IMG/VR virus record: IMGVR_UViG_3300034072_002211 | Location: 1 to 64,000 of that record | Strand: one strand, 5' to 3' | DNA length: 64,000 nt | In this document: positions 8,401-52,956 of the stretch, one piece after another | Numbering within the stretch: position 1 is the stretch's first letter | Layout of the letters: each line of letters begins with the position of its first letter | The notes under the pieces: model-generated | Told to the model about the DNA's origin: nothing | The model's database searches: none | What the model saw: the letters and a program-made list of their open reading frames with translations, nothing else | Made by a program: the position numbers and the translations under genes

Positions 8401-11400
8401 TCAGCAATGCTGTGACGCCAAACACCTATGGTATCATCGACGTGGTGGACCTCAATGTGGGTCAGGACAACCGCGCACTTGATGATCGTTGGCACTGGCG
8501 CCCAGACATGAAGGCAATTGAATGGCCACTCCGTGACTTCGGTCAGGGCGATGCTCCTCTGCCAACTGCTGGCTATGTGAACCTCGATGAAGTCCGCTTC
8601 ACAGTTGCCACCAAGGCTGAGTTTGAGGACTTCTTCGGTCAGCAAGAAGCTACCGATGAGCCCCTGGAAGCAGGCGACCGCGTTTGGGTTTACGGCATCG
8701 GTTCTGGCAAGCCAGAGGATTCGTGGATGACCTACAAGTTCCACGACACTGGTTACAACATCCTGAACACCTTTATGCCAACCTTTGAGGGTCAGGGCAC
8801 TGTGGTTCAGTTGGACCAGAACATCAAGGGTTATCAGAACGCTGACACAAACCCATGGAACACCACGTTCTATGTGGCTCAGCCTCTGCTGGCAGGTGAA
8901 AACGACGAGAATGGTAACGCAATCTCGGGCGAAATGCTGGTTCTCAAGAACCTCCAGGATGCTGACGTTAACCCACGCACTACCTACAAGCCAAGGGTGC
9001 TGGGCAAGGCAAAGCTGGCTCTCACTGGAACCAGTGGCACCACCGGCTTTGTGATGGGCTTCACTCCTGAGGCTCAGCAGATGATCCACAGGATCAAGGT
9101 TATTGTCGATGAACCATTCGCTGAGGGTTCCACGTTTGAGCTGGGATACCAGAACGACTTGGATGCTTTCGTGGCTATCCGTGAGGAAGATCAGAGGGAC
9201 ATTTATCCAACCAACTACGACAACGAAGCGGTGTTGGTTCAGACCCCTGCGACGTCCTACATGCCACCAAACGTCTCGACTGCTGACGTTGAATTGATCC
9301 GTGTGGGTCGAGTCTCGAACTTCTGTGCTCAGACGGTGGTTGAATGGTATTGGACCCGCAGCGACGGTTCTACGGCAAATGGCTCGGTGACGTTCCTGCG
9401 TCCTAGCGACGTTGTTGGTGACACTGACACGGATGATGCCTACCTGCAGACCATCCAGCTGCCAGTTACCCCTTCTGCTATGTCGGGCACATTGAGGGTT
9501 GTGACCAACGGTGTTCAGACTGACGTTCAGGTTCTGACTTTCCTCCGCACAAACCAGGCCGGCATCAACTCGGTTGATCTGACCCGTGCTGCTACCTATG
9601 AGTTCAGCCGCGCTGTCGGTATGTCCATGTATCCATGGAACACCAACACGGCTGGTGCTGATCGCGAGATGATCGCAACTCTGAACAGCCTTGGCACGCA
9701 GGGTTCTTTGCGCGTTGAGGTCGACTACTTCTACGTCAAGGGTTTTGAGCTTACCGAAGTGCTTAACGGCGCTGTGGTTCCAGCAACTTCCAACGTTGAT
9801 GGCGGCACCGCTGATGTGTTCACTTGGATTAAGACTCGCTACCCAAGCCTGAACGGCATCTCGGGTGCCCTACAGGACGGCGATCTTATTGAGGTTGACT
9901 CGGCACATGACACCCCAGGTCGTTGGGCTGTCTACAAGAAGGTCGTCAGTGAGTGGACCATCGTGCGTCGTCAGAATCGCAAGATCAACAGCGATCTCCT
10001 GACTAGCGCAGGTATCTTCAACAGCCAGGAGAACAAGCTCAAGCTGATTCTTCAGGTCTATGATCCCTACAAGGGCTTCATCCCAGGTGTCGCTGATCGC
10101 GAACTGGAATTCAAGACCTTTAACGATCCTGCGGTTTACAATGACGGTCGTATGATCTGGGGTAAGGAACAGGTTGGTAAGCTGTGGTGGGACCTCAGCG
10201 CTGTTCGCTATCTCGATTATGAAATCTATGACTCTTGGAAGTCGAATGACCACAGTGGTGTAAACTACCGCTGGAAGAACTGGGGCCGTGTTGCTCCAAA
10301 CTCCAGCGTGGATATCTACCAGTGGGTCAGGAGTCCAGTTGCTCCAAATGGCTGGTCTGACTACGTTGAGAGCAAGGCTGATCTGAAGATTGACAACAAG
10401 CCAACTGGCACTGTCGAGGAAGACGCCAAGTATGTCACCGCCACTGAGTGGAATGATGATATCCAAGCTGACGAGACAATCTATTACTTTTGGGTTAAGA
10501 ACCCAACGGTTGTTCCAACTCTGCCTTCGCGCAAGCTGTCGGCAAAGCAGGTCAGCAACATCCTCACGGATCCAGCAGCCAACGACATTCCGTTCTTTGC
10601 GGTCATTGACACCAACAAGGTGATCGTAGGTGGTATCAAGCAGTTCCTCAACGAAACTGATACGGTGCTCAAGATCAAGTGGCTCAAGGATGCTGAGATC
10701 ACCAACAACCACCACAAGCAGTGGATGATTCTGCGTGAGGAAGACGAGCGCAACACCATCAACGACACGCTATGGAACAAGATGCGTGACTCGCTGGTTG
10801 GTTGGGACTCGACTCAGAAGTATGTGCCTGATGAGAAGCTACCAGGGGCTCAGCAGATTGGTGCTATGGTTCGTCCTCGCCAGAGCTGGTTCCCAGCTGA
10901 TGCTTCGCCAAATGGCGGGCAGCGTCCAAGTCGTAGCGCCCGCGCGGCATTCGTGGATTGTCTGAATGACATCCTGAGTGAGCAGCCGTTCATCGACCAG
11001 TGGTATAACTGGAGCGAAGTGTTTGACAAGGGTGAGAACCTGCCAGCACCAGACCGCTACATCACCACTGCGCTGGATCTTGTTGATCTTCGCAACTTGC
11101 TGCCAGCGGCACGCAATATGGTTCAGCCCGGCGAATGCGTGCTCATTCAGAACACTGCAGAAGCTGCTGGTTTCTGGACCCTGTGGAAGCTGGTTGAAAT
11201 TGCTGGCCAGCGCCAGTTTATCCTCGAGGACTTCCAGAAGTGGAGGATGCAGGAGGGCGAACTGTGGAGTCTTGCTGATTGGTATGCTGATGGTTGGTCG
11301 GCTAAGAACTTCCCCAACTATCGTTTCCCAACCACTGCGGCACGCGATGCGGCAGGTAACTTGGACGTGACTCTGCTGAAGGGCACGTTGGTTCAGATTG

Positions 11401-13574
11401 ACCACAGCGATGGCGATGGCCGTTGGACTTGGGACGTCTACACCTCAACCTCGAAGTATCAGGTTGCTAAGGCGCGTTCCACGATGAAGCTCAGCGAAGC
11501 ATTCTATGATGATTCGCGCGTGGAGTTTGGTCCTCGCCAGGTGGCAGCAATCCTAGGCGCAAGTGAAGCAACCCGTATCACACCAGAGAGGATTCAGGAA
11601 CTCGCAGACATCATCAACTATCGCGATGGTTCAAGCGAGATTGAGTTCATGCTGAACACCATGAAGACTATCCTTCTGAACACCCTTCAGAAGAACAGGC
11701 TCTTCTTTGGCATGGTCAAGAGCGCGTTTAAGCAGAGCCAGGTCGTTGACTGGGCATTCAAGACGTCGTTCCTCTACCTGGGCGGCTATTCGGAGACCCT
11801 GCGTCAGAGCCCAGTTGCCTTCAAGGATCAGATTGACAACGTCATTGCCTACTTGGAAGAGGTCAAGCCATACCACGTCAAGATTCGTGAGTATGTGCGC
11901 CGACTGAGCTATGGTCCTGACCTTGCTGATCTGGCAATCACTGACTTTGACAAGCCTGTCTATCCAGACGGTCAGCGCAATCGCGTTCTCGACGTTAAGA
12001 ACGAGAACGACCGCAACATCATGGGTATCAACCGTCCTTGGAAGGATTGGTTCGAGAACTATGAGAAGGCACCAACGCCACTGACCAAGTGGGATCTGGA
12101 GTGGAACGGCGTTCGCAAGATGAACGTGACCATGAAGTTCGACCGCATTTCTTGCGGCACGGTTCGTGGTTGGGATACGGCTCCTTGGGATCCACCACTT
12201 CTCGTCTACAGCCAGATTGGCAGCAATACGCAGAGCCTCAGTCAGCTGAATGCTCTCTACAGGAATGTGAACACCCAGGGTGAGCTCAACTACTTCCGCG
12301 ATCAGACTGTGGAAACCATTGAGGAACGCAACTTCCTGGTGCGTAAGGGCATCATTACACCAGACCGTCCAGGTTCGATTGTAACTGTCCTTCAGGAAGG
12401 CTCCCACTATATGTGGACCGGCAACGAGTGGATCAAGTTCGAGGCCATTGGCTGGGATCAGGATCCCGACATGGGCACCGCAACCCGCATCGAAGATGCT
12501 TACCGTCCTCTGCCTGGTATGACCCGTAAGGATGATCCAGGTGTGATTGCTGGTTGTGAATTTGACGGCACGGTGATGACTGACACGTTCCAATATGACG
12601 CTTGGGACATCTTCGAGTGGGATTCCACTGGCTACAGCCAGGGTATCCGTGAACGTGCTGGCTTCGATCAGGAAACTGTTGATGGCAACACTACTCCTGC
12701 TGATGAGAACGATCCTGCTTACGTGGGCATCACTGGCAATGAGTTCAGCCAGCCAGCAGTGAACGGCGCACGTCCTCATGAGCTGGTTCAGATCCGTGGC
12801 GTTGAAAGCGTTGTGATCAACGTCCGCAAGGCTTCTGGCCCTTACATGAAGAACTTCATGAACGCACAGGGCAAGTGGCAGGACACTCTGGTCAGTCAGA
12901 GCGAAATGACGTTTGTTTCCTGGGATCAGAGCGCCCACTCAGTGACCCTGACGGTGCCTAGCTGGACTGAGGATGCTCAGGGCTACACGCCGCTACATGA
13001 CCCTCAGAACCCTTCTACGGGCTTCATCAAGAATGTCATGTTGAGCAAGGGTTACAGGTCTTCAAGCAATGTGGACATGAGTGCCGCAGGAACCAAGACC
13101 TTCAAGCTTCGCGATCTCAGTGATATTGATGGTATTCCAGCTGGTCTGAGGGGCGACAATGTGAACGTTGCGGTTGTGAACACCAAGGATCCAACCAAGC
13201 GCGCAATTGGTGTTCTGTCAAACAGCAAGGGTAGCGAAAAGAACTGGGACGGTCAGGTCACTATCACGTTCTCAACGGGCTTCGTGAACCTTGGTTCGGG
13301 TAAGAGCTGGAACATCATCCCAGTTGATATGTTCAACGAACCAGGCATCGTGTGGGTAGGTGACGCACGCTTCACCTACAACAGCATGACCCGCAATGGT
13401 TCGACTGTGGTCCTCGAAAATGCCTACCTGTCAGCAAGCACCTTGGCACCACTGAACATCACTGAAGATGGTGTTTCGCTGGTCAAGACTTCGCCGGTGC
13501 TGGACGGCTCTATCCAGCGCAGGATGGCAAGCAACCATTCTGACGCAGTGCCTCACGGCCCTAACAGGCCGTGA
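2475..13574 (+). CDS. Giant virion structural protein (baseplate wedge/hub, 3699 aa)
   Basis: Uninterrupted 3699-aa ORF between gp6-like gene and fibre genes; ends with YLEEVKPYHVKIRE-type segment seen in jumbo-myophage baseplate proteins. Confidence 0.7.
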   Translation: MAKKTNRNPFAFTPIVLDQDNHEKRRVIKQLPAVHQTETLQKFFGASLDHLFDPGKGKPINGYVGQKPLWYDPDQDYYLEEGTDDRTFYQLEASMVSKNVEGQLTDLLPYPDLVNQLRFQGALTNNHNRLFSQDFYTWCPPIDLDKIVNFRQYVWLPIDDVAPTSTFEDGQTDGWILADGTPAPVSGPYSGINKFVGRFAGTPAGDQVVSKTFTLNSAITTANAQFDFLKLDSWDYAGGSAGVRERLVVYINDQVAFEFTPVGISGEGGLSLGSGTISLGDITGTYNVTSPGVDTHLGASATWTDRVYRVTVNLTGTGKTFKLGFGSTTNQAIDDESLGIDNVRVWQSSKTGIELNGPTHKSISPGTTKDYFLPGYGPTGDPELKKFYDLSILTDKLIHAEVDGVSRSFTYVPGQDKITFDQRPAADAEVSISVYSDLENNAIGLPNARPEAFGGVQLSSGMRVIITLDRNSDFKKSNVYIVEGVGSSIFLIKEEDWGAGAAPDYMVMARGAANRNEWSTRNRWFHVSTLPDNMDPDYVLKQRATRPIIEFNRDLELYNYGLRRRLDVDLVVENIEDLNGYMNQFPQDVTLGGVRITTRGTTLINVAAVNPRTGTTYGDVSSIRVMVRNTVNPLLNNNVLVLVNQGGALKLILETDGENPSGEPVYGEVFNVLLGSYSGKNLHWDGTNWVESQHKVKANQAPLFELYDLNGNSLRDEGLYPNSTFKGSRLFGYRIDTTGSRIADQALGLPLIHDNKGQIQFENYLSTETYQYVVGGKFLDIVGFYFHKVGNIDAELETLSNDWYKAPTQTRQFMVDRYVSDGRTKLFNISQNAQDITVTRGRVNESKSFERTTLVEDKDFIRVGRQIMIINIQLGDVIEIRTYSSENPPADAKGHYEVPLNLQANPDNAEVDFMTKGDFYDHFSEIMKKQAGFKGAEYSDNNFRDTPKAPNLGTHIIQHSAGLLKTMLLAGNSQLDITAAIRYADAEYARFKDKFQKKILSYTFTGRLANAENYDVWINTALDELNKGKTKHFAFYLSGMAQNESNRLPTFIPPTPSFLGVYPLYAPELISQEVEGADDVWFVRGHDGSLTLGENETCARVLHALELRIFDSVTATVRLRDRPACDFQEAYSDQYRTNEYSYEEYLQVLRPSFERWSVAYRQDYKVNDLSDTTIESKINRKANPWMWNWSSVPMANGQSVPGHWRGIYEKFYGTQRPDLTPWESLGFAIKPEWWDDRYGPAPYTSENLVLWDDLEQGYIHEGERRGINAKWARPGLQQFMPVDARGRLRHPGPRDLIAYNNVTADTDLSYIPDPTYFTEENGGGWFWKVENDTYLGDEVRGRFETKAEALADYVRSWEDRHDDGVLGCGICPQVPLYSDRAADWNFGDIGPVEQTWRRSSAFAFAAATAGYLMKPAKFVELGWNTQDIGLFFKNTPNEQWLNQDTKGRPQHRELQVHGEVLEDLSLVTKVGIQQWVSDLLASKNTAINENFATRVRGLGSQLSYKVAGFTDSQTLVAVTDAFGRVPSEDITISLYRSPSIREETYSGVAIEYTGRGYEIYGYDALNPYFSVMAPAIHAGRISVGDGAKSAAVPNWNPGTYYSVDITVKYQDNFYRSNKTHTSSSFFEPEFWTQVARPQYADGSTLLWYLEGELDPVAEKIAYGTVLKTPQDVADFLNGYQRYLESRGWIFENLGEDEQEVRDWKQALKSFITWSRADVRQPGDYITLSPSSKLVRFATDQGTIQPIEQIINGLYAIVDQNGQPIDSQATRVVRNDGNITVTCDASTSGIFGLRLYVSELEHVLVFNNKTIFGDTIYSPLLNIKQPRIRLQGFKTVGWKGRIDAPGFIVTGDRLTPNFERAADDFRRFFDIESMENKKLQDRARANFGYEEKEYLNNLLLTPTNQFEFYQGMIQQKGSSTSMRRLLRSNFIRHNKGLKLFEEWAFRVGDYGGQEVTPQLDIQIRQSEFKHNPQLIQFSNAVTPNTYGIIDVVDLNVGQDNRALDDRWHWRPDMKAIEWPLRDFGQGDAPLPTAGYVNLDEVRFTVATKAEFEDFFGQQEATDEPLEAGDRVWVYGIGSGKPEDSWMTYKFHDTGYNILNTFMPTFEGQGTVVQLDQNIKGYQNADTNPWNTTFYVAQPLLAGENDENGNAISGEMLVLKNLQDADVNPRTTYKPRVLGKAKLALTGTSGTTGFVMGFTPEAQQMIHRIKVIVDEPFAEGSTFELGYQNDLDAFVAIREEDQRDIYPTNYDNEAVLVQTPATSYMPPNVSTADVELIRVGRVSNFCAQTVVEWYWTRSDGSTANGSVTFLRPSDVVGDTDTDDAYLQTIQLPVTPSAMSGTLRVVTNGVQTDVQVLTFLRTNQAGINSVDLTRAATYEFSRAVGMSMYPWNTNTAGADREMIATLNSLGTQGSLRVEVDYFYVKGFELTEVLNGAVVPATSNVDGGTADVFTWIKTRYPSLNGISGALQDGDLIEVDSAHDTPGRWAVYKKVVSEWTIVRRQNRKINSDLLTSAGIFNSQENKLKLILQVYDPYKGFIPGVADRELEFKTFNDPAVYNDGRMIWGKEQVGKLWWDLSAVRYLDYEIYDSWKSNDHSGVNYRWKNWGRVAPNSSVDIYQWVRSPVAPNGWSDYVESKADLKIDNKPTGTVEEDAKYVTATEWNDDIQADETIYYFWVKNPTVVPTLPSRKLSAKQVSNILTDPAANDIPFFAVIDTNKVIVGGIKQFLNETDTVLKIKWLKDAEITNNHHKQWMILREEDERNTINDTLWNKMRDSLVGWDSTQKYVPDEKLPGAQQIGAMVRPRQSWFPADASPNGGQRPSRSARAAFVDCLNDILSEQPFIDQWYNWSEVFDKGENLPAPDRYITTALDLVDLRNLLPAARNMVQPGECVLIQNTAEAAGFWTLWKLVEIAGQRQFILEDFQKWRMQEGELWSLADWYADGWSAKNFPNYRFPTTAARDAAGNLDVTLLKGTLVQIDHSDGDGRWTWDVYTSTSKYQVAKARSTMKLSEAFYDDSRVEFGPRQVAAILGASEATRITPERIQELADIINYRDGSSEIEFMLNTMKTILLNTLQKNRLFFGMVKSAFKQSQVVDWAFKTSFLYLGGYSETLRQSPVAFKDQIDNVIAYLEEVKPYHVKIREYVRRLSYGPDLADLAITDFDKPVYPDGQRNRVLDVKNENDRNIMGINRPWKDWFENYEKAPTPLTKWDLEWNGVRKMNVTMKFDRISCGTVRGWDTAPWDPPLLVYSQIGSNTQSLSQLNALYRNVNTQGELNYFRDQTVETIEERNFLVRKGIITPDRPGSIVTVLQEGSHYMWTGNEWIKFEAIGWDQDPDMGTATRIEDAYRPLPGMTRKDDPGVIAGCEFDGTVMTDTFQYDAWDIFEWDSTGYSQGIRERAGFDQETVDGNTTPADENDPAYVGITGNEFSQPAVNGARPHELVQIRGVESVVINVRKASGPYMKNFMNAQGKWQDTLVSQSEMTFVSWDQSAHSVTLTVPSWTEDAQGYTPLHDPQNPSTGFIKNVMLSKGYRSSSNVDMSAAGTKTFKLRDLSDIDGIPAGLRGDNVNVAVVNTKDPTKRAIGVLSNSKGSEKNWDGQVTITFSTGFVNLGSGKSWNIIPVDMFNEPGIVWVGDARFTYNSMTRNGSTVVLENAYLSASTLAPLNITEDGVSLVKTSPVLDGSIQRRMASNHSDAVPHGPNRP

Positions 13575-22293: not shown

Positions 22294-23565
22294 TTAATGA
22301 TACTTAAAGTTTTGAACCACGAGTTCGTCGCCTTGGAAGAACACATCTGCGGAGGTTAGGCGACCACCCTTGCCGCTTCCTGTGTCCATGAAATATGCTA
22401 CACCTCCCTGGCTACCACGGACCAAAAGCGGCTTCACAGTGCTCCTAATGTCATGGCCGACCATGACCTGCTTGCCCTGTGGAATCCTATTCACCCACTC
22501 GTAAATGCGCGTGGGATAGCCGTCTGCCCTCTGGGGAGCCGTGTTGTCGACTTCACCAAAGAGCGCCATGGTCTCGAACTTGCCGGTCAAGCGAGCACTC
22601 GTGATGTCAAACATCTCAGGCTCAGCCGCGCCATGCGTGAAGAGAGTGTTGCCAATGATCCAATGGTGCCTAGAGAACCCTAGCAGGGCCCTGTAGCGCG
22701 TTTCGAACTTACGACGGGCGTCGGATGCTAGAGCTTCAATGGCCCTTGTAGTGACCTTGTTACCGTCACTGAGACGCACTCTTACGTCGTTGTGCTTGAC
22801 TTGTTCTAGCCAACGCTCAATCTTGCGCTCATGATTGCCAATGAGGCTGATGCCACGACCGCGCGTCACAATGCTGTAGACGTGATCCACACACTCAAGT
22901 GAATTGATACCATAATCCAGAATATCGCCCAGGAACACGCAGAAAAGCTTTCTCTGAGTTGCCCACTCGGTAGCATTCTTAAGCGGTTCAATCATACCAT
23001 GGACGTCGCCGACTACCATGATTCCGCGATAGCCACGGTTCTCAATGACCTTCTTGAGATCGATGTTGGTCAGTTTGCTGACAACCTCAAAATCCTCATT
23101 ACGAAAGTCAATGACGTTCGCAATACCATCACCCCTGAGAATATCACGCTCATTGGTGCGGAAAACATGCTCGTGCTTGGAGATTGTACCAGTAGCCGAA
23201 AGCCGCCAACTACGCTTGGCATCTGAGAGCTTGGTCTCCAGATTCCTATTACATACGATATAGAAAATGGGAACGCCAGTTCTCGAGCCAATATCGGCGA
23301 GACTCATACGATCCTTTTTGCGGAGATTGGTAGCATCGACGACCACGCGCTCGCCAAGCTCTAGCTTGAGCTGGGTGCGGCGATGAATCTCCTTGAACAC
23401 CACATCATTGATATCAAGACGCTGATAGTCTCCCGAGAGCTCATAGCGGATTTCTTCGCTGCTCATGATCTCATAGGGATCGAACTTCAAGCTAGTCAGG
23501 TGGGTCTTTCCGCCGCCCGCGGGGCCAACCATGATAACCAAACTATGGAGCGGAATTCTTTTCAT
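22294..23565 (-). CDS. pnkp: Polynucleotide kinase-phosphatase (P-loop kinase + metallophosphoesterase), no ligase domain
   Basis: GPAGGGKT P-loop, VVDATN; VGDVHG, LGDILDYG, GNHE, GHD, DTG phosphoesterase motifs as in bacterial Pnkp N-terminal two domains. Confidence 0.85.
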   Translation of the reverse strand: MKRIPLHSLVIMVGPAGGGKTHLTSLKFDPYEIMSSEEIRYELSGDYQRLDINDVVFKEIHRRTQLKLELGERVVVDATNLRKKDRMSLADIGSRTGVPIFYIVCNRNLETKLSDAKRSWRLSATGTISKHEHVFRTNERDILRGDGIANVIDFRNEDFEVVSKLTNIDLKKVIENRGYRGIMVVGDVHGMIEPLKNATEWATQRKLFCVFLGDILDYGINSLECVDHVYSIVTRGRGISLIGNHERKIERWLEQVKHNDVRVRLSDGNKVTTRAIEALASDARRKFETRYRALLGFSRHHWIIGNTLFTHGAAEPEMFDITSARLTGKFETMALFGEVDNTAPQRADGYPTRIYEWVNRIPQGKQVMVGHDIRSTVKPLLVRGSQGGVAYFMDTGSGKGGRLTSADVFFQGDELVVQNFKYH

Positions 23566-26705: not shown

Positions 26706-26981
26706 TCAACCCTCGATGCTGGAGATCTCGATCTCCAGATAATAGTCTTCAGCCATCATCTGGAGAACTCCGCCTTCGATCCATGCTTCTTGGCGAGGAT
26801 CGAACTCAGCCCAATCCAGAGAAGCCGGCGACACTGTGACGGCCTTTCCTTTGTGGTGTTGGACGAAGAGATCCATGGGAGCGAAAGCCGGTGGATTCTC
26901 GGCATCACGAGCTCGATACTTGCGGGCGCTGTAGGTCTGGCCATTGACCAGCTTGTCAGCTAGATCTGAACCCTTGCTCAT
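26706..26981 (-). CDS. Hypothetical protein
   Basis: 91 aa; ATGA overlap with upstream synthetase-like gene. Confidence 0.65.
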   Translation of the reverse strand: MSKGSDLADKLVNGQTYSARKYRARDAENPPAFAPMDLFVQHHKGKAVTVSPASLDWAEFDPRQEAWIEGGVLQMMAEDYYLEIEISSIEG

Positions 26982-27796
26982 TCACTCGGCTCCCTGTTGA
27001 TGTCGTCACGCTGGGCCTGTTGCCAGTTGTAGACGCAACGGTCGAGGCCGATGGCAATCTCGAGCACGAGCGCATCCTTTTCGACCAGACCTTTCTTGCT
27101 CTGGAAAGCCAGCTTCTGAGGGAAATCAGTCCGCTTGCTGATGCTGCAGACTTCCATCCACTTGTCGCCGTTCCAGACCTCGACGTCCATGGTGCGGAGC
27201 GAATAAGCGGGCAGACGATCACTCTCCACAAGCCGCGTCGGCAAGTGAATCTGAGAAGCGATCATCTTGCGGACCTTCTCCAGCATCTCTTCCTGATAGT
27301 CGAGAGCTGTGTCGGCGCTGTAGACGCACTGAAACTCCTGCTGGTAGAATTCCTTGAGCCGCATGTGCTTGGTTGGCTGGACGATCTCGCGCCGGAAACT
27401 CTTACCGGCCTGCCAGACGCAGAAGGGCGGGAAGATGCTCAGTTGATTGTTGAGCAGGTATTGCGCGTAGGCGTAGCTGCCGGGCGTCGTTTCGGGCCGC
27501 AGAGCCAGTTCACGGTAGCCTTGCCGCGCCTGCGTCAGAGCCTCGAACTCTTCTTCAGTTTTGGCAGGAGCATCCACGTCTTCCTGAACCCAGATATCCT
27601 GTTCGGTATAGTTGACGTTGAGGAGGTCGCGCGGAGTCAGCAGCGGTGCTTCCACGAAGAAGAACTTCCACTGTGGGTTGAGGGCAACAAGGTCCCGCTG
27701 AACTGTCTGGGCGAAGAAGTCCCGGAAGTGTTCGCGGAGCCGGATCTCTTCCTCACTCCAGAAGATCAGGCCGTTGATGTCAAAGGTATTCTGCAT
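26978..27796 (-). CDS. Minimal class II aminoacyl-tRNA synthetase, GlyRS (alpha2-type)-like catalytic core without anticodon-binding domain
   Basis: LRPETT (GlyRS LRPETAQ), motif 2 QAGKSFRRE...MRLKEFYQQE, WMEVCSISKRTDF, motif 3 VLEIAIGLDR; ends about 15 aa after motif 3 (272 aa). Confidence 0.8.
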   Translation of the reverse strand: MQNTFDINGLIFWSEEEIRLREHFRDFFAQTVQRDLVALNPQWKFFFVEAPLLTPRDLLNVNYTEQDIWVQEDVDAPAKTEEEFEALTQARQGYRELALRPETTPGSYAYAQYLLNNQLSIFPPFCVWQAGKSFRREIVQPTKHMRLKEFYQQEFQCVYSADTALDYQEEMLEKVRKMIASQIHLPTRLVESDRLPAYSLRTMDVEVWNGDKWMEVCSISKRTDFPQKLAFQSKKGLVEKDALVLEIAIGLDRCVYNWQQAQRDDINREPSE

Positions 27797-27797
27797 G

Positions 27798-28178
27798 TCA
27801 GACCAACTTCATTGGCGTGGGCAGGGCAACGTAGGCGCCTGTCTTGGGATAACGGATGTGGGTTGCGGTGGTCGTCCCGTCCTCTTGGATCTCCACGCGG
27901 AAGTAGATCTCCAGCCCCGAATAGCGGAAGTTGTCGCTACAGCTTTCCGGGAGGTTGAGCTGGATGGCGTCATGATCCCGCGAGTCCTTGGTGGACCCTA
28001 CCTGATAGTCGTCCCAGATGATGGGAAACTTGGGCTTCTTGGCCTCTTCCTCACGGCGAGCCAGCTCAGCCTGCATCCGCTGGATCTGCCCCTGTAGGTC
28101 CTCGTCGCTCTTCCCGGCGAAAGGATCGCGCTTGGGCGCGGTATCGTCAATACCACCGGGAAGAGGAGAAATGCTCAT
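27798..28178 (-). CDS. Hypothetical protein
   Basis: Start reassigned to MSISPL (ATGA overlap at 28175-28178); stop 1 nt before synthetase ATG. Confidence 0.7.
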   Translation of the reverse strand: MSISPLPGGIDDTAPKRDPFAGKSDEDLQGQIQRMQAELARREEEAKKPKFPIIWDDYQVGSTKDSRDHDAIQLNLPESCSDNFRYSGLEIYFRVEIQEDGTTTATHIRYPKTGAYVALPTPMKLV

Positions 28179-28696
28179 TTGAATGCTCCAAGGGCAACGA
28201 GAATCAGACCTAGGATCACAGCCATAGTGCCAATAATCAGCGTGGGAAAGCTGATTCCTTTCTTCACGACCTGTGGTGCAGGTGGAGTTGGCTTGACCGG
28301 CTCGGGCTTGGGAACGCGAATGCCCAACGAACCACCCCAATCGAGATTGTCCCAGGGGATGCCACCCCGATTGTTGTTGCCCATACTGTGGCCGGTGCGG
28401 ATAAACAGGTTCTCCGAAGCGGCCCAAGCATCCAACTCACGCCACACCGCATTGTAGGGGCTCTGAGGGTTGCTATGGGAGTTCTTGTAGCCAGCATCCA
28501 GAGGAGCGGCAAAGAGATGCCGGATCTCTTTGGGAGCCAGGACGGGAGCATAGTCATTCCCGCCCTTGTCGATTTGTGTTGTCAGCGCGTTGAGGAGGTC
28601 CTCTTTGACAAACTTACGGAGCATGTCCGACCTGCGCGTCACTCGTTCCTGGCGGCGCAGTTCTTCAGTTTGCTTCAGTTGTTCACCAATCGACAC
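28175..28696 (-). CDS. Hypothetical C-terminally membrane-anchored protein
   Basis: GTG 28696 with GAGG RBS just downstream of tRNA; C-terminal TM LIIGTMAVILGLILVALG. Confidence 0.65.
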   Translation of the reverse strand: MSIGEQLKQTEELRRQERVTRRSDMLRKFVKEDLLNALTTQIDKGGNDYAPVLAPKEIRHLFAAPLDAGYKNSHSNPQSPYNAVWRELDAWAASENLFIRTGHSMGNNNRGGIPWDNLDWGGSLGIRVPKPEPVKPTPPAPQVVKKGISFPTLIIGTMAVILGLILVALGAFK

Positions 28697-28716: not shown

Positions 28717-28792
28717 TGGCGCTCCCGGTGGGGCTCGAACCCACGACCCGCAGATTTAGAGTCCGCTGCTCTGCCAGCTGAGCTACGGGAGC
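28717..28792 (-). tRNA. Amber suppressor tRNA, anticodon CUA
   Basis: 76 nt: GCTCCCG-TA-GCTC-AGCTGGCA-GAGC-A-GCGGA-CTCTAAA-TCTGC-GGGTC-GTGGG-TTCGAGC-CCCAC-CGGGAGC-G-CCA; 7-bp acceptor, D-loop GG, U33, anticodon CTA at 28757-28759, encoded CCA. Confidence 0.95.
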
Positions 28793-28803
28793 ATGTAACC
28801 TGT

Positions 28804-29262
28804 TTAGGACTTTTTCTCCAAAGCGTCAAGCCGTGCGGCAATTTCCTGGACCAGTCGCAGCGTCTCCTCAGAGTTCTGCTTGATCTGCTCCTGCTCATCA
28901 TGAGTCCAGGCGTTGCTGTCTACGATCATGTGGGCGGCCAGCTTGGCCGTGATGATCGGTGCCACGAGGAAGGAGCAGATGTGCATGAAGATTGCGCCGA
29001 AGAATCGGCTGCTCGTGTGGGTTGGCGAATAGTCGCCATAGCCGACGGTGGTCGCCGTGACGCTGGCCCACCAGTAGCCCTCTGCGAGCTTCTTGCCCTC
29101 GATGAAGCTGAACATGACCGCTGCGAGGGTCATGATCAGTAGGTATGCGATCAACAGGCTGAATAACCGGTTGAACATCTTTTGCATCAGCGTGAGCTCT
29201 TGTCCCGCATGGACTGCGGTGCTCAGGATGTCGCTACCGGCTTGTTCGATCTGTCTACGCAT
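28804..29262 (-). CDS. Two-TM potassium channel (KcsA/Ion_trans_2-like)
   Basis: YWWASVTATTVGYGDYSP selectivity filter flanked by TM helices; GGAGG RBS. Confidence 0.9.
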   Translation of the reverse strand: MRRQIEQAGSDILSTAVHAGQELTLMQKMFNRLFSLLIAYLLIMTLAAVMFSFIEGKKLAEGYWWASVTATTVGYGDYSPTHTSSRFFGAIFMHICSFLVAPIITAKLAAHMIVDSNAWTHDEQEQIKQNSEETLRLVQEIAARLDALEKKS

Positions 29263-29360
29263 TTGTGCCTCCTTTCCTGAACCGTAACACAGGAGAGCAG
29301 CCTGTCAACAGAAAAGGGCGCCAGTTTCCTGACGCCCTTATAACCGTAGTGAGCTGTCGG

Positions 29361-29951: not shown

Positions 29952-31304
29952 TTAGGACTTCCTCCATTCGGTGCCGTGAACGCCATCGGCCAGCGTGATC
30001 CCCATATCAGTGAGCTGCTGACGGATCCTATCAGCCTCCCCGTAGTTTTTGGCCCTACGTGCCTCTTGACGAGCCGCAATTAGAGCCTCGACAGCCTCCT
30101 TGTCAACACCAAGTGTCCGCCATTGGTGCGGAGTATGGTTAAAGAGACCGAGAAACTGACCAGCCTTGATCAGTCGAGCCTTTGCGGGCGCCTTGTCCTT
30201 GGCATGGTCGAGGTCATCTGCGAGTCTATGGAGGACAGACAGAGCTGTGGTGGTATTGAGGTCCTGCGATAGCGCAGAGATGATCTCTGCTGGCACATCA
30301 ACGTCCTCGGCGTAGTTGAGCTCGTCGTGCCGATAGAGGACCTCATAGAGCCCGTCGAGGGCACGATGCGCCATGTCCAGCTTGTCCATAGTAAAGTCCA
30401 TGGGCGAGCGGTAATGTGACTGCATGAAGAGGTAACGAACGCTCTCCGCGGGATACTGATCGAAAAGCTCGTTCAAGAGGATCACGTTGCCGCGGCTCTT
30501 GCTCATCTTTTCGCCATTCACTGTCAGGAGACCGTTGTGTATCCAGTAGTTGGCAAGCGGAGCACCGTTGTGGTGGCACTGGCTCTGAGCGCACTCGGCT
30601 TCATGATGCGGAAAGCGCAGATCCTGACCACCACCGTGAATGTCGATTGTTGGACGTGCGAACGTGTGGTTGATCATGGCCGAGCATTCAATATGCCAAC
30701 CCGGCCGCCCCTGGCCCCAAGGCGAGAACCAGCTTGGCTCGCCCAGCTTTGCGGGTTTCCAGAGCACGAAATCTCTGGGGTCCTTTTTCTTGGGATCGAC
30801 CTCAACCCGTGAACCCGCTTCCGTGTGGGTGTGATTTGCGAGACCGGGATGGGGATTGCTGGGAACGTGGAAGAAAACCTCCCCGTCCACCGCATAGGCA
30901 TAGCCGTGATCGATCAGTGCGATGATCATGGCAATCATACCAGGAATGTGCTGGGTGGCCCTTGGTTCCACAGTGGGCGGCAAGCAAGCCAGAGCCTCGA
31001 GATCCATATGGTAGGCCGCGAGTGCCGTGTCAGTGATCTGGCTGATCGGAACACCGCGCTCGATTGATGCTGCGATGATCTTGTCATCCACGTCCGTGAT
31101 GTTGCGGACATAGCGGACTTCGCGCTCTCCGTAGACGTGGCGCAGAAGCCGGAAGACCTGGTCGAACACGATGGCTGGGCGCGCGTTACCGATATGCGCT
31201 GGCCCATAGACCGTTGGACCACAGACATACATAGCCACCTGCTGCGAAAACGCAGGCTTGAACTCTTCCACTTGGCGGCTCTGACTGTTGTAGAATGTGA
31301 TCAT
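29952..31304 (-). CDS. cysS: Cysteinyl-tRNA synthetase
   Basis: MYVCGPTVY, HIGN, NITDVDDKII, GRPGWHIECSAM, DIHGGGQDLRFPHHEAE, KMSKS, C-terminal ADRIRQQL...I.L.D. Confidence 0.97.
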   Translation of the reverse strand: MITFYNSQSRQVEEFKPAFSQQVAMYVCGPTVYGPAHIGNARPAIVFDQVFRLLRHVYGEREVRYVRNITDVDDKIIAASIERGVPISQITDTALAAYHMDLEALACLPPTVEPRATQHIPGMIAMIIALIDHGYAYAVDGEVFFHVPSNPHPGLANHTHTEAGSRVEVDPKKKDPRDFVLWKPAKLGEPSWFSPWGQGRPGWHIECSAMINHTFARPTIDIHGGGQDLRFPHHEAECAQSQCHHNGAPLANYWIHNGLLTVNGEKMSKSRGNVILLNELFDQYPAESVRYLFMQSHYRSPMDFTMDKLDMAHRALDGLYEVLYRHDELNYAEDVDVPAEIISALSQDLNTTTALSVLHRLADDLDHAKDKAPAKARLIKAGQFLGLFNHTPHQWRTLGVDKEAVEALIAARQEARRAKNYGEADRIRQQLTDMGITLADGVHGTEWRKS

Positions 31305-33488: not shown

Positions 33489-34691
33489 TCACTCGCTTAG
33501 ACTGTTGTCCCGGTAATCAGACCAGCTCGCCCCTCCCCAGAGGTGCCGCATGGCATTGACCTTGCTCTGACTACCAAGCTGCGAGCCCACAAACTTGATG
33601 ATGTTGGCGTAAACGCCTTCTTCGCCCTCGTCCAAACGATCCCAGGCAGTGAACTTGAAGCCCTGGAGACCATCATTGACCTTGGTCACCTTCTCCGCGA
33701 ACTTCTTCTTGCTGCCGTTGAGGTTGTCGAACTCAGCCTGGACTTCCCAGAAGATGTCACTGGCCAGCTTCTTCAACCCGGTGAAGATGGTCTTGGCGAA
33801 GTCGTCGCTAGCCTTGACTAGATCCTCGGGCAGGAAGGGCTTTGCATCATCCAGCTTCTCGTCCACAATGAGACGGATCACATCCTTCTCATGGGTCAAG
33901 TGCTCAAGCGTCTTGTGGAGTAGCGAATACCACTCGCCCTTCAACTTGAGCATGGTGCCATCGGGCCAACGCAGAACGTCGCCTTCTTCACCCTCGATTG
34001 CTCGGATCTCTTCAATCATCTCCTCGTCCAGGCCATCCTGGAGAGAAGAGAACGAGCAGCAAGGAATGCCATAAGCGGCTGCTTCTTCCTTGAGCTCAGG
34101 TGCATCCATGTATTCACCGGTGGTGTTGTCACGGATTGCGGTGAGAACCAGCTGAGTCACAGGATAGTCGATGACGATCCGCTGAATACGAGAGCACCAC
34201 TCAAAGATTGGAGTCTTGCCTTGGCTCATCCAATACTTGCAGAACTCGTGATACTCAACACGGTCCTTGGCCCACTCGTCAACGGGCGCAGCCACGCCAG
34301 TGAGGCCCATCTTAGTGCAGAAGCGCACCTGACCCTTGATCAACAGAGGCGTGATCATAGATCCGTCTAGCTTCTTGAAGCGACGGTAGGGCTTGGACCA
34401 GTCCACATTCTCAGGAAGCGTTTCGTTGCGCTCACCGAGGTTGAAGAACTTGTGATACTTGCGAGCAAGGACCTTGCCAGTGGCCGTGTCAAACGTGATG
34501 CCGCGGCATTCACGCAGGAGCGCCGTCCGGCGATCGGTCACAGGTGGGAAGGTGTCCTCGAAGTTGACCAGATAGTTGACGACCGTGTAGCCGTGCTCTT
34601 CGTCAACCTTGACCACGAACTCTTCACGGCCCTCAATGGCCTCAAGGATTTCACTCAAGTGAGTGATCGTGGGAAACTGATAGTGAGTCAT
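33489..34691 (-). CDS. rnl1: RNA ligase 1 (T4 Rnl1-like)
   Basis: ECRGITFD...KYHKFFNLGE, motif I KLDGS, IFEWCS, EGDV, LKLKGEWY. Confidence 0.9.
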   Translation of the reverse strand: MTHYQFPTITHLSEILEAIEGREEFVVKVDEEHGYTVVNYLVNFEDTFPPVTDRRTALLRECRGITFDTATGKVLARKYHKFFNLGERNETLPENVDWSKPYRRFKKLDGSMITPLLIKGQVRFCTKMGLTGVAAPVDEWAKDRVEYHEFCKYWMSQGKTPIFEWCSRIQRIVIDYPVTQLVLTAIRDNTTGEYMDAPELKEEAAAYGIPCCSFSSLQDGLDEEMIEEIRAIEGEEGDVLRWPDGTMLKLKGEWYSLLHKTLEHLTHEKDVIRLIVDEKLDDAKPFLPEDLVKASDDFAKTIFTGLKKLASDIFWEVQAEFDNLNGSKKKFAEKVTKVNDGLQGFKFTAWDRLDEGEEGVYANIIKFVGSQLGSQSKVNAMRHLWGGASWSDYRDNSLSE

Positions 34692-48394: not shown

Positions 48395-49270
48395 TTACTT
48401 GCCGATGACGTTCCCAAAGACCCAAGTATGAACTCGGGCACTGACGGAATAGCCACGCTCAACTGCCTGCTCCGCGATGCGAGCCTGGTGACTCTCCTGC
48501 ATTTCACGGTCAGCACCAACTGGCATGATCCAAACGTCCCAGTCGATGCCTGCTTCACGGTAAGCCTCAGTCGCGCGAGCAACTTCGTCCCAAGCACGAT
48601 CGGTGCCGTTGCTGACGAACTTCAGCTGACCAGTCGGGCTGATTGCCTTGTAGTGAGCCAACACCTCAGGCTTGATTGCGTTTGCCCACATCTCACCAGA
48701 CAAGTAGAGCTTAGGAGAAACGGACCAGAACAGTTCACCATCATGGTTGGCAAACAGGTTCTCAAAAGCCGGACGTGGCTTCTGAGTGCCGTTGGTTTCA
48801 ATGGTCACGAACTTTGGCGTGTTGCCACGCGCTGCGAAGTTCTCCATAACATCCACGATGGCAGTCTGGCTCATCATTGGCTCACCGCCAGTGAATGCCA
48901 TGTGGTGCCACTGCTTGGACTGCGGATGAAGGAACTTACCATGAGGCAGAACAGCCTCAATCTTCTCGCAAATCTCGGCAGCGGTGCTCTGATGTGCGAG
49001 GTGCGAGAACTTCTTTGCCCAGCTGTAGCTGGAGTCACAACCACGATGGAAGACCGGCAAAGCTTCCATACTCTTGTATTCCGAAGGATCAATCTTCAGA
49101 TAGTCCAGATCGTAGGTCTCGGGCTTGTCTGGCTGCTCCTGGCCGAAACCAGCGCACTCAAAGTTACAACCCCAGACGCGCAACCATGCGGTTGGCCGAC
49201 CGGTGTACTGGCCTTCACCCTGAAAGGTCTGTCCGAAGATCTCGGAATAGCGGTATTTCTTCTCTGTCAT
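48395..49270 (-). CDS. queE: 7-carboxy-7-deazaguanine synthase (radical SAM)
   Basis: YSEIFGQTFQGEG...WLRVWGCNFECAGF...CDSSYSW, FTGGEP, IETNGT, SVSPK, SARVH. Confidence 0.9.
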   Translation of the reverse strand: MTEKKYRYSEIFGQTFQGEGQYTGRPTAWLRVWGCNFECAGFGQEQPDKPETYDLDYLKIDPSEYKSMEALPVFHRGCDSSYSWAKKFSHLAHQSTAAEICEKIEAVLPHGKFLHPQSKQWHHMAFTGGEPMMSQTAIVDVMENFAARGNTPKFVTIETNGTQKPRPAFENLFANHDGELFWSVSPKLYLSGEMWANAIKPEVLAHYKAISPTGQLKFVSNGTDRAWDEVARATEAYREAGIDWDVWIMPVGADREMQESHQARIAEQAVERGYSVSARVHTWVFGNVIGK

Positions 49271-52221: not shown

Positions 52222-52956
52222 TTAGGAGTGGCCCTTCATGCTCAGCATGAGCTTGTAGAACTCTTCCTTGAGGTGCGGCTCATCGCGGAACTTGCCGCGC
52301 ATGATGGCCGTTGTCATGTCGGACTCATGTTCACGCACGCCACGATGGGTCATGCAGTGGTGCTCGGCCTTCAGGACAACTGCGACGTTCTCGGTCTCCG
52401 CGTAGCGGACCAGTTCGTCAGCAATCTGAGTGGTCATCTCTTCCTGAATCTGCGGACGCTCCGCAATCCAGTGGACCAGGCGGTTGAACTTCGAGAGGCC
52501 AATGACCTTGTCCTCTGGGAAGATGCCAACCCAGCAGCGACCAACGATGTTCTGGAAGTGGTGCGCGCAGGTCGAACGGATCGAGATCGGACCAGCGGTG
52601 TAAAGATCCTGGTATCCCACGTTGGGGAACGAGGTGATCTTTGGTGCGCCAACATAGCGGCCGCCGTAGGTCTCGTTTACATACATCTTGGCGACTCGAC
52701 GAGCGGTGCCATTGGTATTGTGGTCATGCTCGGTGTCAATGACTAGACTGCGGAGAACCGCTTCCATCTTCTCAGTGACTTCGTCGACTAGAGCGGCGCG
52801 CTCTTCCTCGGTGATGAACTTCGAGATGTTGTCATTGCAGTGAAACTTCTGGCCGGCTTCAATGAGGCGCGCGCGGATCTTCTCAGAAACGGGAACCTCT
52901 TGCCCATGGGCGCAATCGTTCGAACCGCAACCCGTGGTAAGTTTGGTATCGGACAT
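52222..52956 (-). CDS. folE: GTP cyclohydrolase I
   Basis: TARRVAKMY, STCAHHF, GLSKFNRLV, PQIQEEMT, AEHHCMTHRGV. Confidence 0.96.
   Translation of the reverse strand: MSDTKLTTGCGSNDCAHGQEVPVSEKIRARLIEAGQKFHCNDNISKFITEEERAALVDEVTEKMEAVLRSLVIDTEHDHNTNGTARRVAKMYVNETYGGRYVGAPKITSFPNVGYQDLYTAGPISIRSTCAHHFQNIVGRCWVGIFPEDKVIGLSKFNRLVHWIAERPQIQEEMTTQIADELVRYAETENVAVVLKAEHHCMTHRGVREHESDMTTAIMRGKFRDEPHLKEEFYKLMLSMKGHS

What the first reader, a model, noticed from the sequence alone, without database searches (positions are those of the whole stretch)
28717..28792. Stand-alone amber suppressor tRNA (CUA) with hybrid identity elements
Canonical cloverleaf with U33, CUA, A37/A38, G73 and encoded CCA. The body resembles tRNA-Arg (GCxCCCGTAGCTCAGCTGG...CGGGxGCG) but has C20 rather than the ArgRS determinant A20. 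G1-C72/C2-G71 match Gly acceptor determinants, but pair 3 (U-A) and G73 do not. U35+G73 are known to favour GlnRS or LysRS mischarging of amber suppressors. It is the only tRNA I found in 64 kb and sits inside a protein operon, not in a tRNA cluster, which suggests a dedicated role.
Basis: partly seen in the sequence, partly recalled or inferred. Interest (0 to 1): 0.75.

Follow-up and report, generated by a model that had tools for sequence, protein, structure and literature searches.

The report
Amber suppressor tRNA in huge phage
This is a real, conserved tRNA that reads the UAG stop codon, carried by a roughly 470 kb phage that still uses UAG only as a rare stop, which puts it in a puzzle already seen in cultured jumbo phages rather than in a new genetic code.

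Summary
The tRNA is real. It lies at 28717-28792 on the minus strand, has anticodon CUA and scores 64 bits against the Rfam tRNA model. The window is the first 64 kb of a 277 kb piece of a roughly 468 kb huge phage.

- **Not the only tRNA.** The record has 25 tRNAs, including a second CUA tRNA. Complete relatives carry about 60 tRNAs and 2-3 CUA tRNAs.
- **Conserved.** Seven close relatives carry the same tRNA at the same place. Fifteen of 21 stem pairs show compensatory changes, while the loop CUCUAAA and G73 never change.
- **No recoding.** The standard code fits best. TAG ends 4-7% of genes, orthologous stops swap among TAG, TAA and TGA, and no in-frame TAG aligns inside a conserved protein.
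- **Mixed identity.** The core is closest to phage tRNA-Lys and the acceptor stem to tRNA-Arg, but the acceptor stem is not conserved among orthologues.
- **Neighbouring GlyRS-like gene.** A catalytic-core-only enzyme lies nearby, but it also occurs in relatives with no CUA tRNA, so a dedicated pair is unlikely.
- **Already seen elsewhere.** Xanthomonas phage XacN1 and Sinorhizobium jumbo phages carry such tRNAs (labelled Sup or "Pyl"), and no target was found in XacN1.

Verdict: a functional amber suppressor and a new member of a known kind. Its benefit to the phage is unresolved.

The parts
28717..28792 (-). tRNA gene, anticodon CUA (amber suppressor), 76 nt with encoded CCA, discriminator G73
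   Evidence: ARAGORN. Rfam RF00005 at 64.1 bits. Eight orthologues show 15 of 21 compensatory pairs.
28757..28759 (-). Anticodon C34-U35-A36 (reads TAG on the plus strand), inside the invariant loop CUCUAAA
   Evidence: Sequence. Invariant in all 8 orthologues.
28804..29262 (-). Upstream gene for a K+-channel-like protein (152 aa). Its stop lies 11 nt before the tRNA 5' end.
   Evidence: Pfam Ion_trans_2 1.6e-10 and phrog_14690 9e-31. Present upstream of the tRNA in 5 of 7 relatives.
29314..29339 (-). Terminator-like hairpin (11 pairs, then a T-rich tail) upstream of the K+-channel gene. It may mark the start of the transcription unit that carries the tRNA.
   Evidence: Consensus scan only. 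Function not shown.
28175..28642 (-). 155-aa ORF of unknown function downstream of the tRNA. Present in only some relatives.
   Evidence: Gene call. No Pfam, PHROG or NCBIfam match. Presence varies.
27798..28178 (-). 126-aa ORF of unknown function. Its ends overlap those of both neighbouring genes by a few bases. Present in only some relatives.
26978..27796 (-). GlyRS-like class IIa catalytic core only (272 aa, no anticodon-binding domain). Context gene, not shown to act on this tRNA.
   Evidence: Pfam tRNA-synt_2b 4e-11. NCBIfam GlyRS 9e-17, far below cut-off. PDB GlyRS 3e-9. Motif 2 (FRRE) and motif 3 (GLDR) invariant in 31 homologues. Model pLDDT 86, with best folds GlyRS and ProRS cores.
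29952..31304 (-). Cysteinyl-tRNA synthetase (450 aa). Context gene in the same collinear translation and tRNA-repair block.
   Evidence: NCBIfam cysS 455.8 bits, above cut-off 340. Pfam 4e-108.

Best explanation
The gene encodes a functional amber (UAG) suppressor tRNA of a roughly 468 kb lytic huge phage that most likely infects Pseudomonadota. It is transcribed as part of a minus-strand block of early or middle genes for translation and tRNA repair. That block runs RNA ligase, ATP-grasp protein, CysRS, K+ channel, tRNA, GlyRS-like core. The tRNA would then be cut out of the long transcript by host tRNA-processing enzymes.

No phage enzyme fits its identity elements, so a host synthetase probably charges it. 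Lysine is the most likely amino acid and glutamine the next. The reasons are a core that looks like a tRNA-Lys(CUU) with a single U36-to-A change, the presence of U35, and A36-A37-A38, the motif known to direct i6A37 modification.

In the infected cell it would compete with release factor 1 and make UAG leaky. The phage does not use UAG as a sense codon. It keeps TAG as a true but rare stop (4-7% of genes), so the suppressor costs the phage little.

**Shown:** gene, fold, conservation, standard code, low TAG use.
**Inferred:** expression, processing, charging amino acid, actual read-through.
**Unresolved:** who benefits. The two readings I favour are (a) leaky UAG acts on host or competitor messages during take-over, with the phage protected by avoiding TAG, and (b) it is a stable version of the 'rare stop plus suppressor' state proposed as the step before recoding.
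For: - **Real tRNA:**
- **Purifying selection on a CUA tRNA:** 8 syntenic orthologues with 15 of 21 compensatory pairs, none broken, and CUCUAAA and G73 invariant.
- **Several conserved CUA tRNAs per genome:** two in this record, three in G001, two in G003.
- **Standard code, by gene calling:** my hexamer gene caller gives the best or equal coverage and score with code 11 in all seven genomes tested.
- **Standard code, by orthologues:** orthologues of TAG-terminated genes end at the same residue with TAA, TGA or TAG. No in-frame TAG aligns inside a confident orthologue.
- **TAG share of stops:** 4.0%, 6.8%, 6.0% and 3.8% in four CUA-bearing genomes, against 13.4% and 14.2% in two CUA-free relatives of similar GC.
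- **Crude host comparator:** about 21% TAG among long ORFs in mostly proteobacterial loci.
- **Identity:** Lys-like core 0.85, Arg-like acceptor 0.87.
- **No phage-encoded candidates:** no LysRS/AspRS/AsnRS family, release factor, or PylS above cut-off.
- **Host inference:** the closest CysRS homologues are Alpha- and Gammaproteobacteria. Cultured relatives infect Sinorhizobium and Xanthomonas.
- **Same situation published for XacN1:** CUA suppressors, only 18 amber stops, and no target found by in-silico read-through (PMC5852040).
Against: - No expression, processing or charging data exist. The source is a subsurface DNA metagenome and no RNA run was listed.
- No beneficiary of suppression was found.
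- TAG-terminated phage genes show no shortened read-through tails or extra back-up stops, as might be expected if suppression were strong.
- One CUA-bearing relative (G007, GC 33%) uses TAG for 13% of stops, so the link between suppressor and TAG avoidance is not clean. It rests on only two or three independent lineages.
- G73 differs from the A73 of the phage's tRNA-Lys genes, so lysine charging is uncertain.
- If the host is an alphaproteobacterium without GlnRS (established knowledge, not tested here), the glutamine route would need GluRS plus an amidotransferase.
Confidence: 0.6

Rival explanations
1. Pre-recoding or buffering state only. TAG became rare first and a suppressor was then picked up. 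It persists because it cheaply masks TAG nonsense mutations in a very large genome, with no host-directed function.
For: Borges et al. propose this route and saw suppressors in standard-code relatives of recoded phages (10.1101/2021.08.26.457843). TAG is rare here.
Against: - Two to three distinct CUA tRNAs are kept with invariant anticodon loops across genomes whose proteins have diverged by tens of percent. The same G73/A73 pair recurs in XacN1. That looks like sustained selection, not a transient state.
- No member of the clade examined has taken the next step and acquired sense TAGs.
- GC is 46-53%, not the low GC that the model invokes.
Confidence: 0.2
2. Programmed read-through. The suppressor extends a few specific TAG-terminated phage proteins into functional longer forms.
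For: - A few TAG stops are conserved in all three genomes, for example G000 69443-69844, 238359-238691 and 244955-245254.
- TAG-terminated genes cluster mildly at G000 235-245 kb (p = 0.03).
Against: - Extensions are short, not conserved and not coding-like. Only 1 of 24 TAG genes has a coding-like tail.
- In the best candidate, the downstream ORF has its own ribosome-binding site and ATG, and lies in a different frame in G003.
- Most orthologous stops interchange with TAA or TGA.
- The XacN1 authors found nothing by in-silico read-through.
Confidence: 0.08
3. Natural orthogonal pair. The neighbouring GlyRS-like core, which has no anticodon-binding domain, is the dedicated charging enzyme of this CUA tRNA.
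For: - The tRNA lies 50-1900 nt upstream of this gene in all 8 close genomes, and directly next to it in two.
- The enzyme keeps motifs 2 and 3 and the GlyRS fold but has no anticodon-binding domain, so the anticodon would not matter to it.
Against: - The adjacency is part of a fully collinear 12 kb block, so it is not independent evidence.
- The enzyme family (about 1800 homologues) also occurs in G005 and G008, which have no CUA tRNA.
- In Phosso, the enzyme and the CUA tRNA lie 270 kb apart.
- XacN1 has CUA tRNAs but no homologue of the enzyme at E <= 1e-5.
- The tRNA's acceptor stem, the only part such an enzyme could read, is not conserved and is unlike the phage's tRNA-Gly.
- The complex prediction was not folded, so it gives no evidence either way.
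Confidence: 0.05
4. The phage uses a TAG-sense code (code 15-like) in some genes, and the tRNA decodes them.
For: A CUA tRNA is the hallmark of TAG-recoded phages.
Against: - Treating TAG as sense never improves coverage or coding score in seven genomes.
- No in-frame TAG aligns inside a confident orthologue.
- TAG stops align with TAA or TGA stops in orthologues.
- No RF2 gene is present.
Confidence: 0.03
5. It is a pyrrolysine tRNA, as ARAGORN and GenBank records label such genes, or it is not a decoding tRNA at all (a decoy or relic).
For: Tool and database labels of 'tRNA-Pyl'.
Against: - The label only reflects the anticodon. The tRNA has canonical G18G19, T-loop, a 5-bp anticodon stem and a 5-nt variable loop.
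- No PylS match above cut-off.
- A relic would not show compensatory stem evolution together with an invariant anticodon loop.
Confidence: 0.02

Closest known systems
tRNA-Sup (CUA) pair of Xanthomonas citri jumbo phage XacN1 (AP018399.1; PMC5852040)
   Same: - 83% identical over positions 6-76.
- XacN1 has a G73 type (GCUUUCG..) and an A73 type (GGCCCGU..), matching this genome's two CUA tRNAs.
- It is a standard-code jumbo phage of a proteobacterium with few amber stops (18) and dozens of tRNAs.
- The authors found no target.
   Different: In XacN1 the two suppressors are tandem, lie inside the terminal-repeat tRNA array and share an identical core. Here the G73 type is solitary in a protein-gene block about 225 kb from the A73 type. 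No GlyRS-like homologue was detected in XacN1.
'tRNA-Pyl(cta)' of Sinorhizobium jumbo phages Phosso (PV764938.1) and AP-J-162 (PMC11242549)
   Same: - Phosso's CUA tRNA is 84% identical over the full length.
- Phosso's GlyRS-like core is 61% identical.
   Different: In Phosso the tRNA is not next to the GlyRS-like gene, has A73, and shows two U-U mismatches in the acceptor stem. The records and the paper call it pyrrolysine tRNA, which the structure does not support.
Suppressor tRNAs of TAG-recoded (code 15) phages: crAss-like, Lak, jumbo gut phages
   Same: A phage-encoded CUA tRNA, thought to be charged by a host enzyme and expressed from standard-code genes.
   Different: Those phages have in-frame TAG in late and lysis genes and sometimes encode RF2. 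This clade has neither. GC here is 46-53%, not low.
Laboratory amber suppressors of E. coli (supE tRNA-Gln CUA; amber derivatives of tRNA-Lys and tRNA-Arg)
   Same: The CUA anticodon is one base change away from a sense tRNA. U35 directs charging by LysRS or GlnRS (PMC1483225, plus established identity rules). The 31-39 pair here is A-U, as I recall it is in E. coli tRNA-Lys.
   Different: This one is natural, conserved and phage-borne. G73 combined with a Lys-like core does not match either identity set cleanly.

Membership tests
tRNA (Rfam RF00005) | Cloverleaf that scores above the family's gathering score | tested here: met
   64.1 bits against a gathering score of 29, full-length match. 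ARAGORN agrees.
tRNA (Rfam RF00005) | Stems maintained by compensatory change among homologues | tested here: met
   15 of 21 pairs have changes on both sides, and none is broken, in 8 orthologues.
Amber suppressor tRNA | Anticodon 5'-CUA-3' in a 7-nt loop with U33 and a purine at 37 | tested here: met
   Loop CUCUAAA, invariant in 8 orthologues.
Amber suppressor tRNA | Is aminoacylated and inserts an amino acid at UAG in vivo | not testable with these tools
   No RNA run was listed for this DNA. Needs tRNA sequencing and an amber reporter with mass spectrometry.
Phage stop-codon recoding system (code 15) | In-frame TAG codons in phage genes, typically late or lysis genes | tested here: not met
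   No gain from a TAG-sense code. No in-frame TAG inside orthologue alignments. Stops interchange among orthologues.
Phage stop-codon recoding system (code 15) | Accessory release factor 2 gene (present in some members) | tested here: not met
   No PF00472 match in G000, G001, G003 or G005.
tRNA-Pyl | Pyl-type architecture (as I recall it: short D-loop without G18G19, 6-bp anticodon stem, 3-nt variable loop) | tested here: not met
   Canonical D-loop AGCUGGCA with G18G19, 5-bp anticodon stem and 5-nt variable loop.
tRNA-Pyl | Cognate PylRS encoded alongside | tested here: not met
   No TIGR02367 match above cut-off in G000, G001 or G003. The window's own record is only about 60% of the genome.
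tRNA-Arg | ArgRS identity elements A20 and C35 (E. coli rules) | tested here: not met
   C20 and U35. The phage's own tRNA-Arg genes have GGAUAGAGC D-loops with A20. Only the acceptor stem is Arg-like (0.87).
tRNA-Gly | G1-C72, C2-G71, G3-C70, U73, C35 and C36 (bacterial rules) | tested here: not met
   Has U3-A70, G73, U35 and A36. Pairs 1-72 and 2-71 vary among orthologues. Phage tRNA-Gly genes are GCGGG../U73.
tRNA-Lys | U35 (major), U36 and A73 (minor), Lys-type body | tested here: inconclusive
   U35 is present and the core (positions 8-65) is 0.85 identical to the phage tRNA-Lys(CUU). However, position 36 is A and the discriminator is G.
tRNA-Gln | U35, G73, G10, weak 1-72 pair, G2-C71, G3-C70 (E. 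coli rules) | tested here: inconclusive
   U35, G73 and G10 are present. The tRNA has G1-C72, C2-G71 and U3-A70, and the body is unlike the phage's tRNA-Gln genes (UGCCC..).

The most novel reading that the evidence does not exclude
The CUA tRNA and the adjacent GlyRS-like core, which has no anticodon-binding domain, form a natural phage-borne orthogonal pair. It would insert glycine, or another small amino acid, at UAG independently of host synthetases.
Probability: 0.05. Interest if true: 0.8.

Novelty: new member of a known kind. Interest (0 to 1): 0.35.

Why it matters
Amber suppressor tRNAs in phages are usually taken as a sign of stop-codon recoding. This clade shows that they can be kept for a long time, in two or three conserved versions, by huge phages that never use TAG as a sense codon. 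TAG stops appear to be depleted in most of the suppressor-bearing genomes examined.

That sharpens an open question first raised for XacN1 in 2018: what does a standard-code phage gain from making UAG leaky? Cultured relatives exist (XacN1, Phosso, AP-J-162), so the question can be tested directly.

It also warns annotators in two ways. 'tRNA-Pyl' labels on phage CUA tRNAs are wrong, and a CUA tRNA alone is no reason to re-call genes with code 15.

Tried and rejected
- **TAG, TGA or TAA as sense.** I wrote a hexamer gene caller and ran it on seven genomes. The standard code was always best or equal. A first attempt using raw ORF length was uninformative because antisense shadow ORFs of a 3699-aa gene mimic TAG read-through.
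- **First in-frame TAG search.** An all-ORF search against orthologues was swamped by off-frame conservation. Redone against confident genes only, it gave 0 hits for TAG and TAA and 8 collagen-repeat artefacts for TGA.
- **Read-through fusion** of the 133-aa gene at G000 69443-69844 to the 665-aa ORF downstream. Rejected because that ORF has its own RBS and ATG and is in another frame in G003.
- **Shorter tails or back-up stops after TAG.** None found.
- **Clustering of TAG stops.** Weak (p = 0.03, 0.09 and 0.27).
- **Dedicated GlyRS-like/tRNA pair.** Disfavoured by phyletic distribution and collinearity. The complex prediction was not folded.
- **Phage-encoded RF, TilS, LysRS family, PylS.** None above cut-off.
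- **Phage GluRS as charger.** A phage GluRS exists, but the tRNA's D-arm is not Glu-like.
- **Ribozyme or other RNA next to the tRNA.** None credible.
- **Exact-match search** for the tRNA's 3' half in IMG/VR. No hits.
- **Expression data.** No RNA run was listed.

Full report
**1. The observation**

ARAGORN finds one tRNA in the window, at 28717-28792 on the minus strand, with anticodon CUA. Rfam's tRNA model matches it full length at 64.1 bits, against a gathering score of 29. Read on the minus strand it has:
- acceptor stem GCUCCCG/CGGGAGC
- D-loop AGCUGGCA, so position 20 is C
- anticodon loop CUCUAAA
- a 5-nt variable loop and a canonical T-loop
- discriminator G73 and an encoded CCA

The gene starts 11 nt after the stop of a K+-channel-like ORF and ends 75 nt before the next ORF. 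All are on the minus strand.

**2. What the window is**

The window is the first 64 kb of a 277,444-bp IMG/VR virus record. A protein encoded in the window also occurs on a 468,011-bp contig, so the record is a piece of a roughly 468 kb genome.

The window encodes phage and translation-related functions:
- collagen-like tail fibres
- family-B DNA polymerase, ThyX and a 5'-3' exonuclease
- an Rnl1-type RNA ligase and a kinase/phosphatase, as in tRNA repair
- GTP cyclohydrolase I
- CysRS
- a 462-aa ValRS-like enzyme, about half the length of the NCBIfam valS models (860-863 positions), so probably without the editing domain
- a GlyRS-like catalytic core

The whole record has 25 tRNAs, including a second CUA tRNA at 253634-253712. 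The closest bacterial CysRS homologues are Alpha- and Gammaproteobacteria at 45-50% identity. The DNA comes from a subsurface metagenome.

**3. Relatives**

The GlyRS-like protein recovered 31 huge-phage loci from IMG/VR. The seven closest (72-78% identity) all carry a CUA tRNA upstream of it on the same strand.

The surrounding block is collinear in all eight genomes. It runs RNA ligase, ATP-grasp protein, CysRS, a 196-aa ORF, the K+ channel, tRNA-CUA, small variable ORFs, the GlyRS-like core and two further ORFs.

Across the eight orthologous tRNAs, 15 of 21 stem pairs show compensatory changes and none is broken. The loop CUCUAAA and G73 never change. This is strong evidence for a functional tRNA whose CUA anticodon is under selection. 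The encoded CCA is present in only four of the eight.

Two complete relatives with terminal repeats were fetched:

| Genome | Size (bp) | tRNAs | CUA tRNAs |
|---|---|---|---|
| G001 | 462,455 | 62 | 3 |
| G003 | 435,856 | 59 | 2 |

The CUA tRNAs fall into three types:
- a G73 type, which is the finding and its orthologues
- an A73 type with a GG.. acceptor stem, including this record's second copy
- a Gln-like type in G001

**4. Is TAG recoded?**

No. I wrote a hexamer-based gene caller and ran it on seven genomes.
- Standard code gives 85-91% coverage in all seven.
- Treating TAG as sense never improves coverage or total coding score.
- Orthologues of TAG-terminated genes end at the same residue, with TAA, TGA or TAG.
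- No in-frame TAG, and no in-frame TAA, aligns inside a confident orthologous protein across G000, G001 and G003. The eight TGA hits are collagen-repeat artefacts.
- In the most suggestive 'fusion', the downstream ORF has its own ribosome-binding site and start codon, and is in another frame in G003.
- No release-factor gene is present.

**5. TAG use**

These are TAG shares of stops among confident genes:

| Genome | CUA tRNAs | GC | TAG share |
|---|---|---|---|
| G000 | 2 (partial record) | 53% | 4.0% |
| G001 | 3 | 47.5% | 6.8% |
| G003 | 2 | 46.3% | 6.0% |
| G006 | 2 | 39.2% | 3.8% |
| G007 | 1 | 33.0% | 13.3% |
| G005 | none | 48.7% | 13.4% |
| G008 | none | 48.1% | 14.2% |

- ARAGORN on the whole G005 and G008 genomes found no suppressor-type anticodon.
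- The close clade against the two CUA-free genomes gives Fisher p = 2e-12. That comparison rests on only two or three independent lineages, so I treat the link as suggestive.
- G007 is the exception to the pattern.
- A crude comparator gives about 21% TAG. It is the set of long ORFs in 80 mostly proteobacterial cysS loci.
- TAG-terminated phage genes show no shorter read-through tails than other genes.

**6. Identity**

- Positions 8-65 are closest to the phage's own tRNA-Lys (0.85), which is one base (U36 to A) away from a CUU anticodon. The acceptor stem is closest to the phage's tRNA-Arg genes (0.87). 'Hybrid' is therefore a fair description.
- The acceptor stem changes freely among orthologues. 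Pair 1-72 is G-C or C-G, pair 2-71 is C-G or U-A, and pair 3-70 shows four pair types. It is unlikely to carry the identity.
- The conserved elements are the anticodon loop, the D-arm and G73.
- A20 and C35 (Arg) and the Gly set are absent.
- By established E. coli identity rules, and by the LysRS/GlnRS 'seesaw' described in PMC1483225, U35 points to LysRS or GlnRS.
- The phage encodes CysRS, GluRS, a short ValRS, a further class II enzyme and the GlyRS-like core. It encodes no LysRS-family enzyme and no PylS.
- I infer charging by a host enzyme, with lysine the most likely amino acid. This is not shown.

**7. The GlyRS-like neighbour**

- It is a 272-aa class IIa catalytic core with invariant motif 2 (FRRE) and motif 3 (GLDR).
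- The model is confident (pLDDT 86). Its best structural matches are GlyRS and ProRS catalytic domains. It has no anticodon-binding domain.
- It is tempting to pair it with the CUA tRNA, but several facts argue against that:
  - The family has about 1800 homologues.
  - It is present in G005 and G008, which have no CUA tRNA.
  - In more distant relatives it sits among ordinary tRNA genes.
  - It lies 270 kb from the CUA tRNA in phage Phosso.
  - It was not detected in XacN1, which has CUA tRNAs.
- The complex prediction was not folded and counts for nothing.

**8. What is already known**

- Xanthomonas phage XacN1 (385 kb) has two CUA suppressor tRNAs, one with G73 and one with A73. The G73 copy is 83% identical to this tRNA.
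- Its authors counted 18 amber stops and found no target by in-silico read-through (PMC5852040).
- Sinorhizobium phage Phosso (469 kb) has a CUA tRNA 84% identical to this one, annotated 'tRNA-Pyl'. The AP-J-162 paper (471.5 kb, 66 tRNAs) reports the same label (PMC11242549).
- Rhizobium phage RHph_I1_18 carries a relative of the A73 type.
- Borges et al. describe suppressors in standard-code relatives of recoded phages and propose them as a step towards recoding.

**9. Verdict**

The finding is a real and evidently functional amber suppressor tRNA gene, and a new member of a known kind. The identity analysis needs correcting to a Lys-like core with a drifting acceptor stem. The 'only tRNA, hence dedicated role' argument does not hold.

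The mechanism I commit to is host-charged UAG suppression during infection, in a phage that has kept TAG rare and never uses it as a sense codon. The benefit is unresolved. Expression, charging and read-through remain untested.

Noticed in passing
window 26978-27796 (-): A GlyRS-like class IIa catalytic core of 272 aa with no anticodon-binding domain. Motifs 2 and 3 are invariant. About 1800 homologues of 245-300 aa exist, almost all on huge-phage or metagenomic contigs, and also in cultured Caulobacter, Brevundimonas, Xanthomonas and Sinorhizobium jumbo phages. Substrate unknown.
   Followed up: partly
window 57945-59333 (-): A 462-aa ValRS-like enzyme that matches ValRS models in two stretches (506 bits, below the 704-bit cut-off). 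It appears to lack the editing (CP1) domain, so it would be a compact, possibly error-prone phage ValRS.
   Followed up: no
G000 253634-253712 (-) (locus L002:1490-1568); XacN1 locus L172:2913-3071: A second CUA tRNA of a different type (GG.. acceptor stem, A73). The same G73/A73 pair recurs in G001, G003 and XacN1. In XacN1 the two are tandem with identical cores and differ only in the acceptor stem and discriminator.
   Followed up: partly
window 2475-13574 (+): A giant ORF of 3699 aa with no Pfam match, preceded by a 774-aa ORF that also has no match. Its antisense frames produce long false ORFs broken only by TAG.
   Followed up: no
window 33489-34691 (-) and 22294-23541 (-): A T4 Rnl1-type RNA ligase and a kinase plus metallophosphatase protein. 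Together they look like a tRNA-repair pair, in the same block as the aaRS genes and the suppressor.
   Followed up: no
G000 about 167.8-169.0 kb (L280:1039-2289, -): A phage-encoded bacterial-type GluRS (gltX model 444 bits, above cut-off). In this genome it lacks about 45 residues of the catalytic domain that the G001 orthologue has.
   Followed up: partly
whole record G000: IMG/VR labels the record 'provirus, 60% complete'. However, a protein encoded in the window occurs on a 468 kb contig, and close relatives are 436-465 kb genomes, two with direct terminal repeats. The provirus call is therefore probably a mis-trim at the tRNA array.
   Followed up: partly
G003 308345-308421; G001 172991-173066, 187178-187255: tRNAs with Leu anticodons (UAA, CAA) but only 76-78 nt long and without the long variable arm of bacterial tRNA-Leu. 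They are among the nearest relatives of the A73-type suppressors.
   Followed up: no
G000 235752-245254: Six of the record's 24 TAG-terminated genes fall within 20 consecutive genes (permutation p = 0.03). The syntenic region in G001 shows a weaker excess (p = 0.09).
   Followed up: partly
window 52222-52956 (-) and 48395-49270 (-): GTP cyclohydrolase I and a 4Fe-4S/radical-SAM-like protein. This could be part of a 7-deazaguanine (queuosine-type) DNA or tRNA modification pathway.
   Followed up: no
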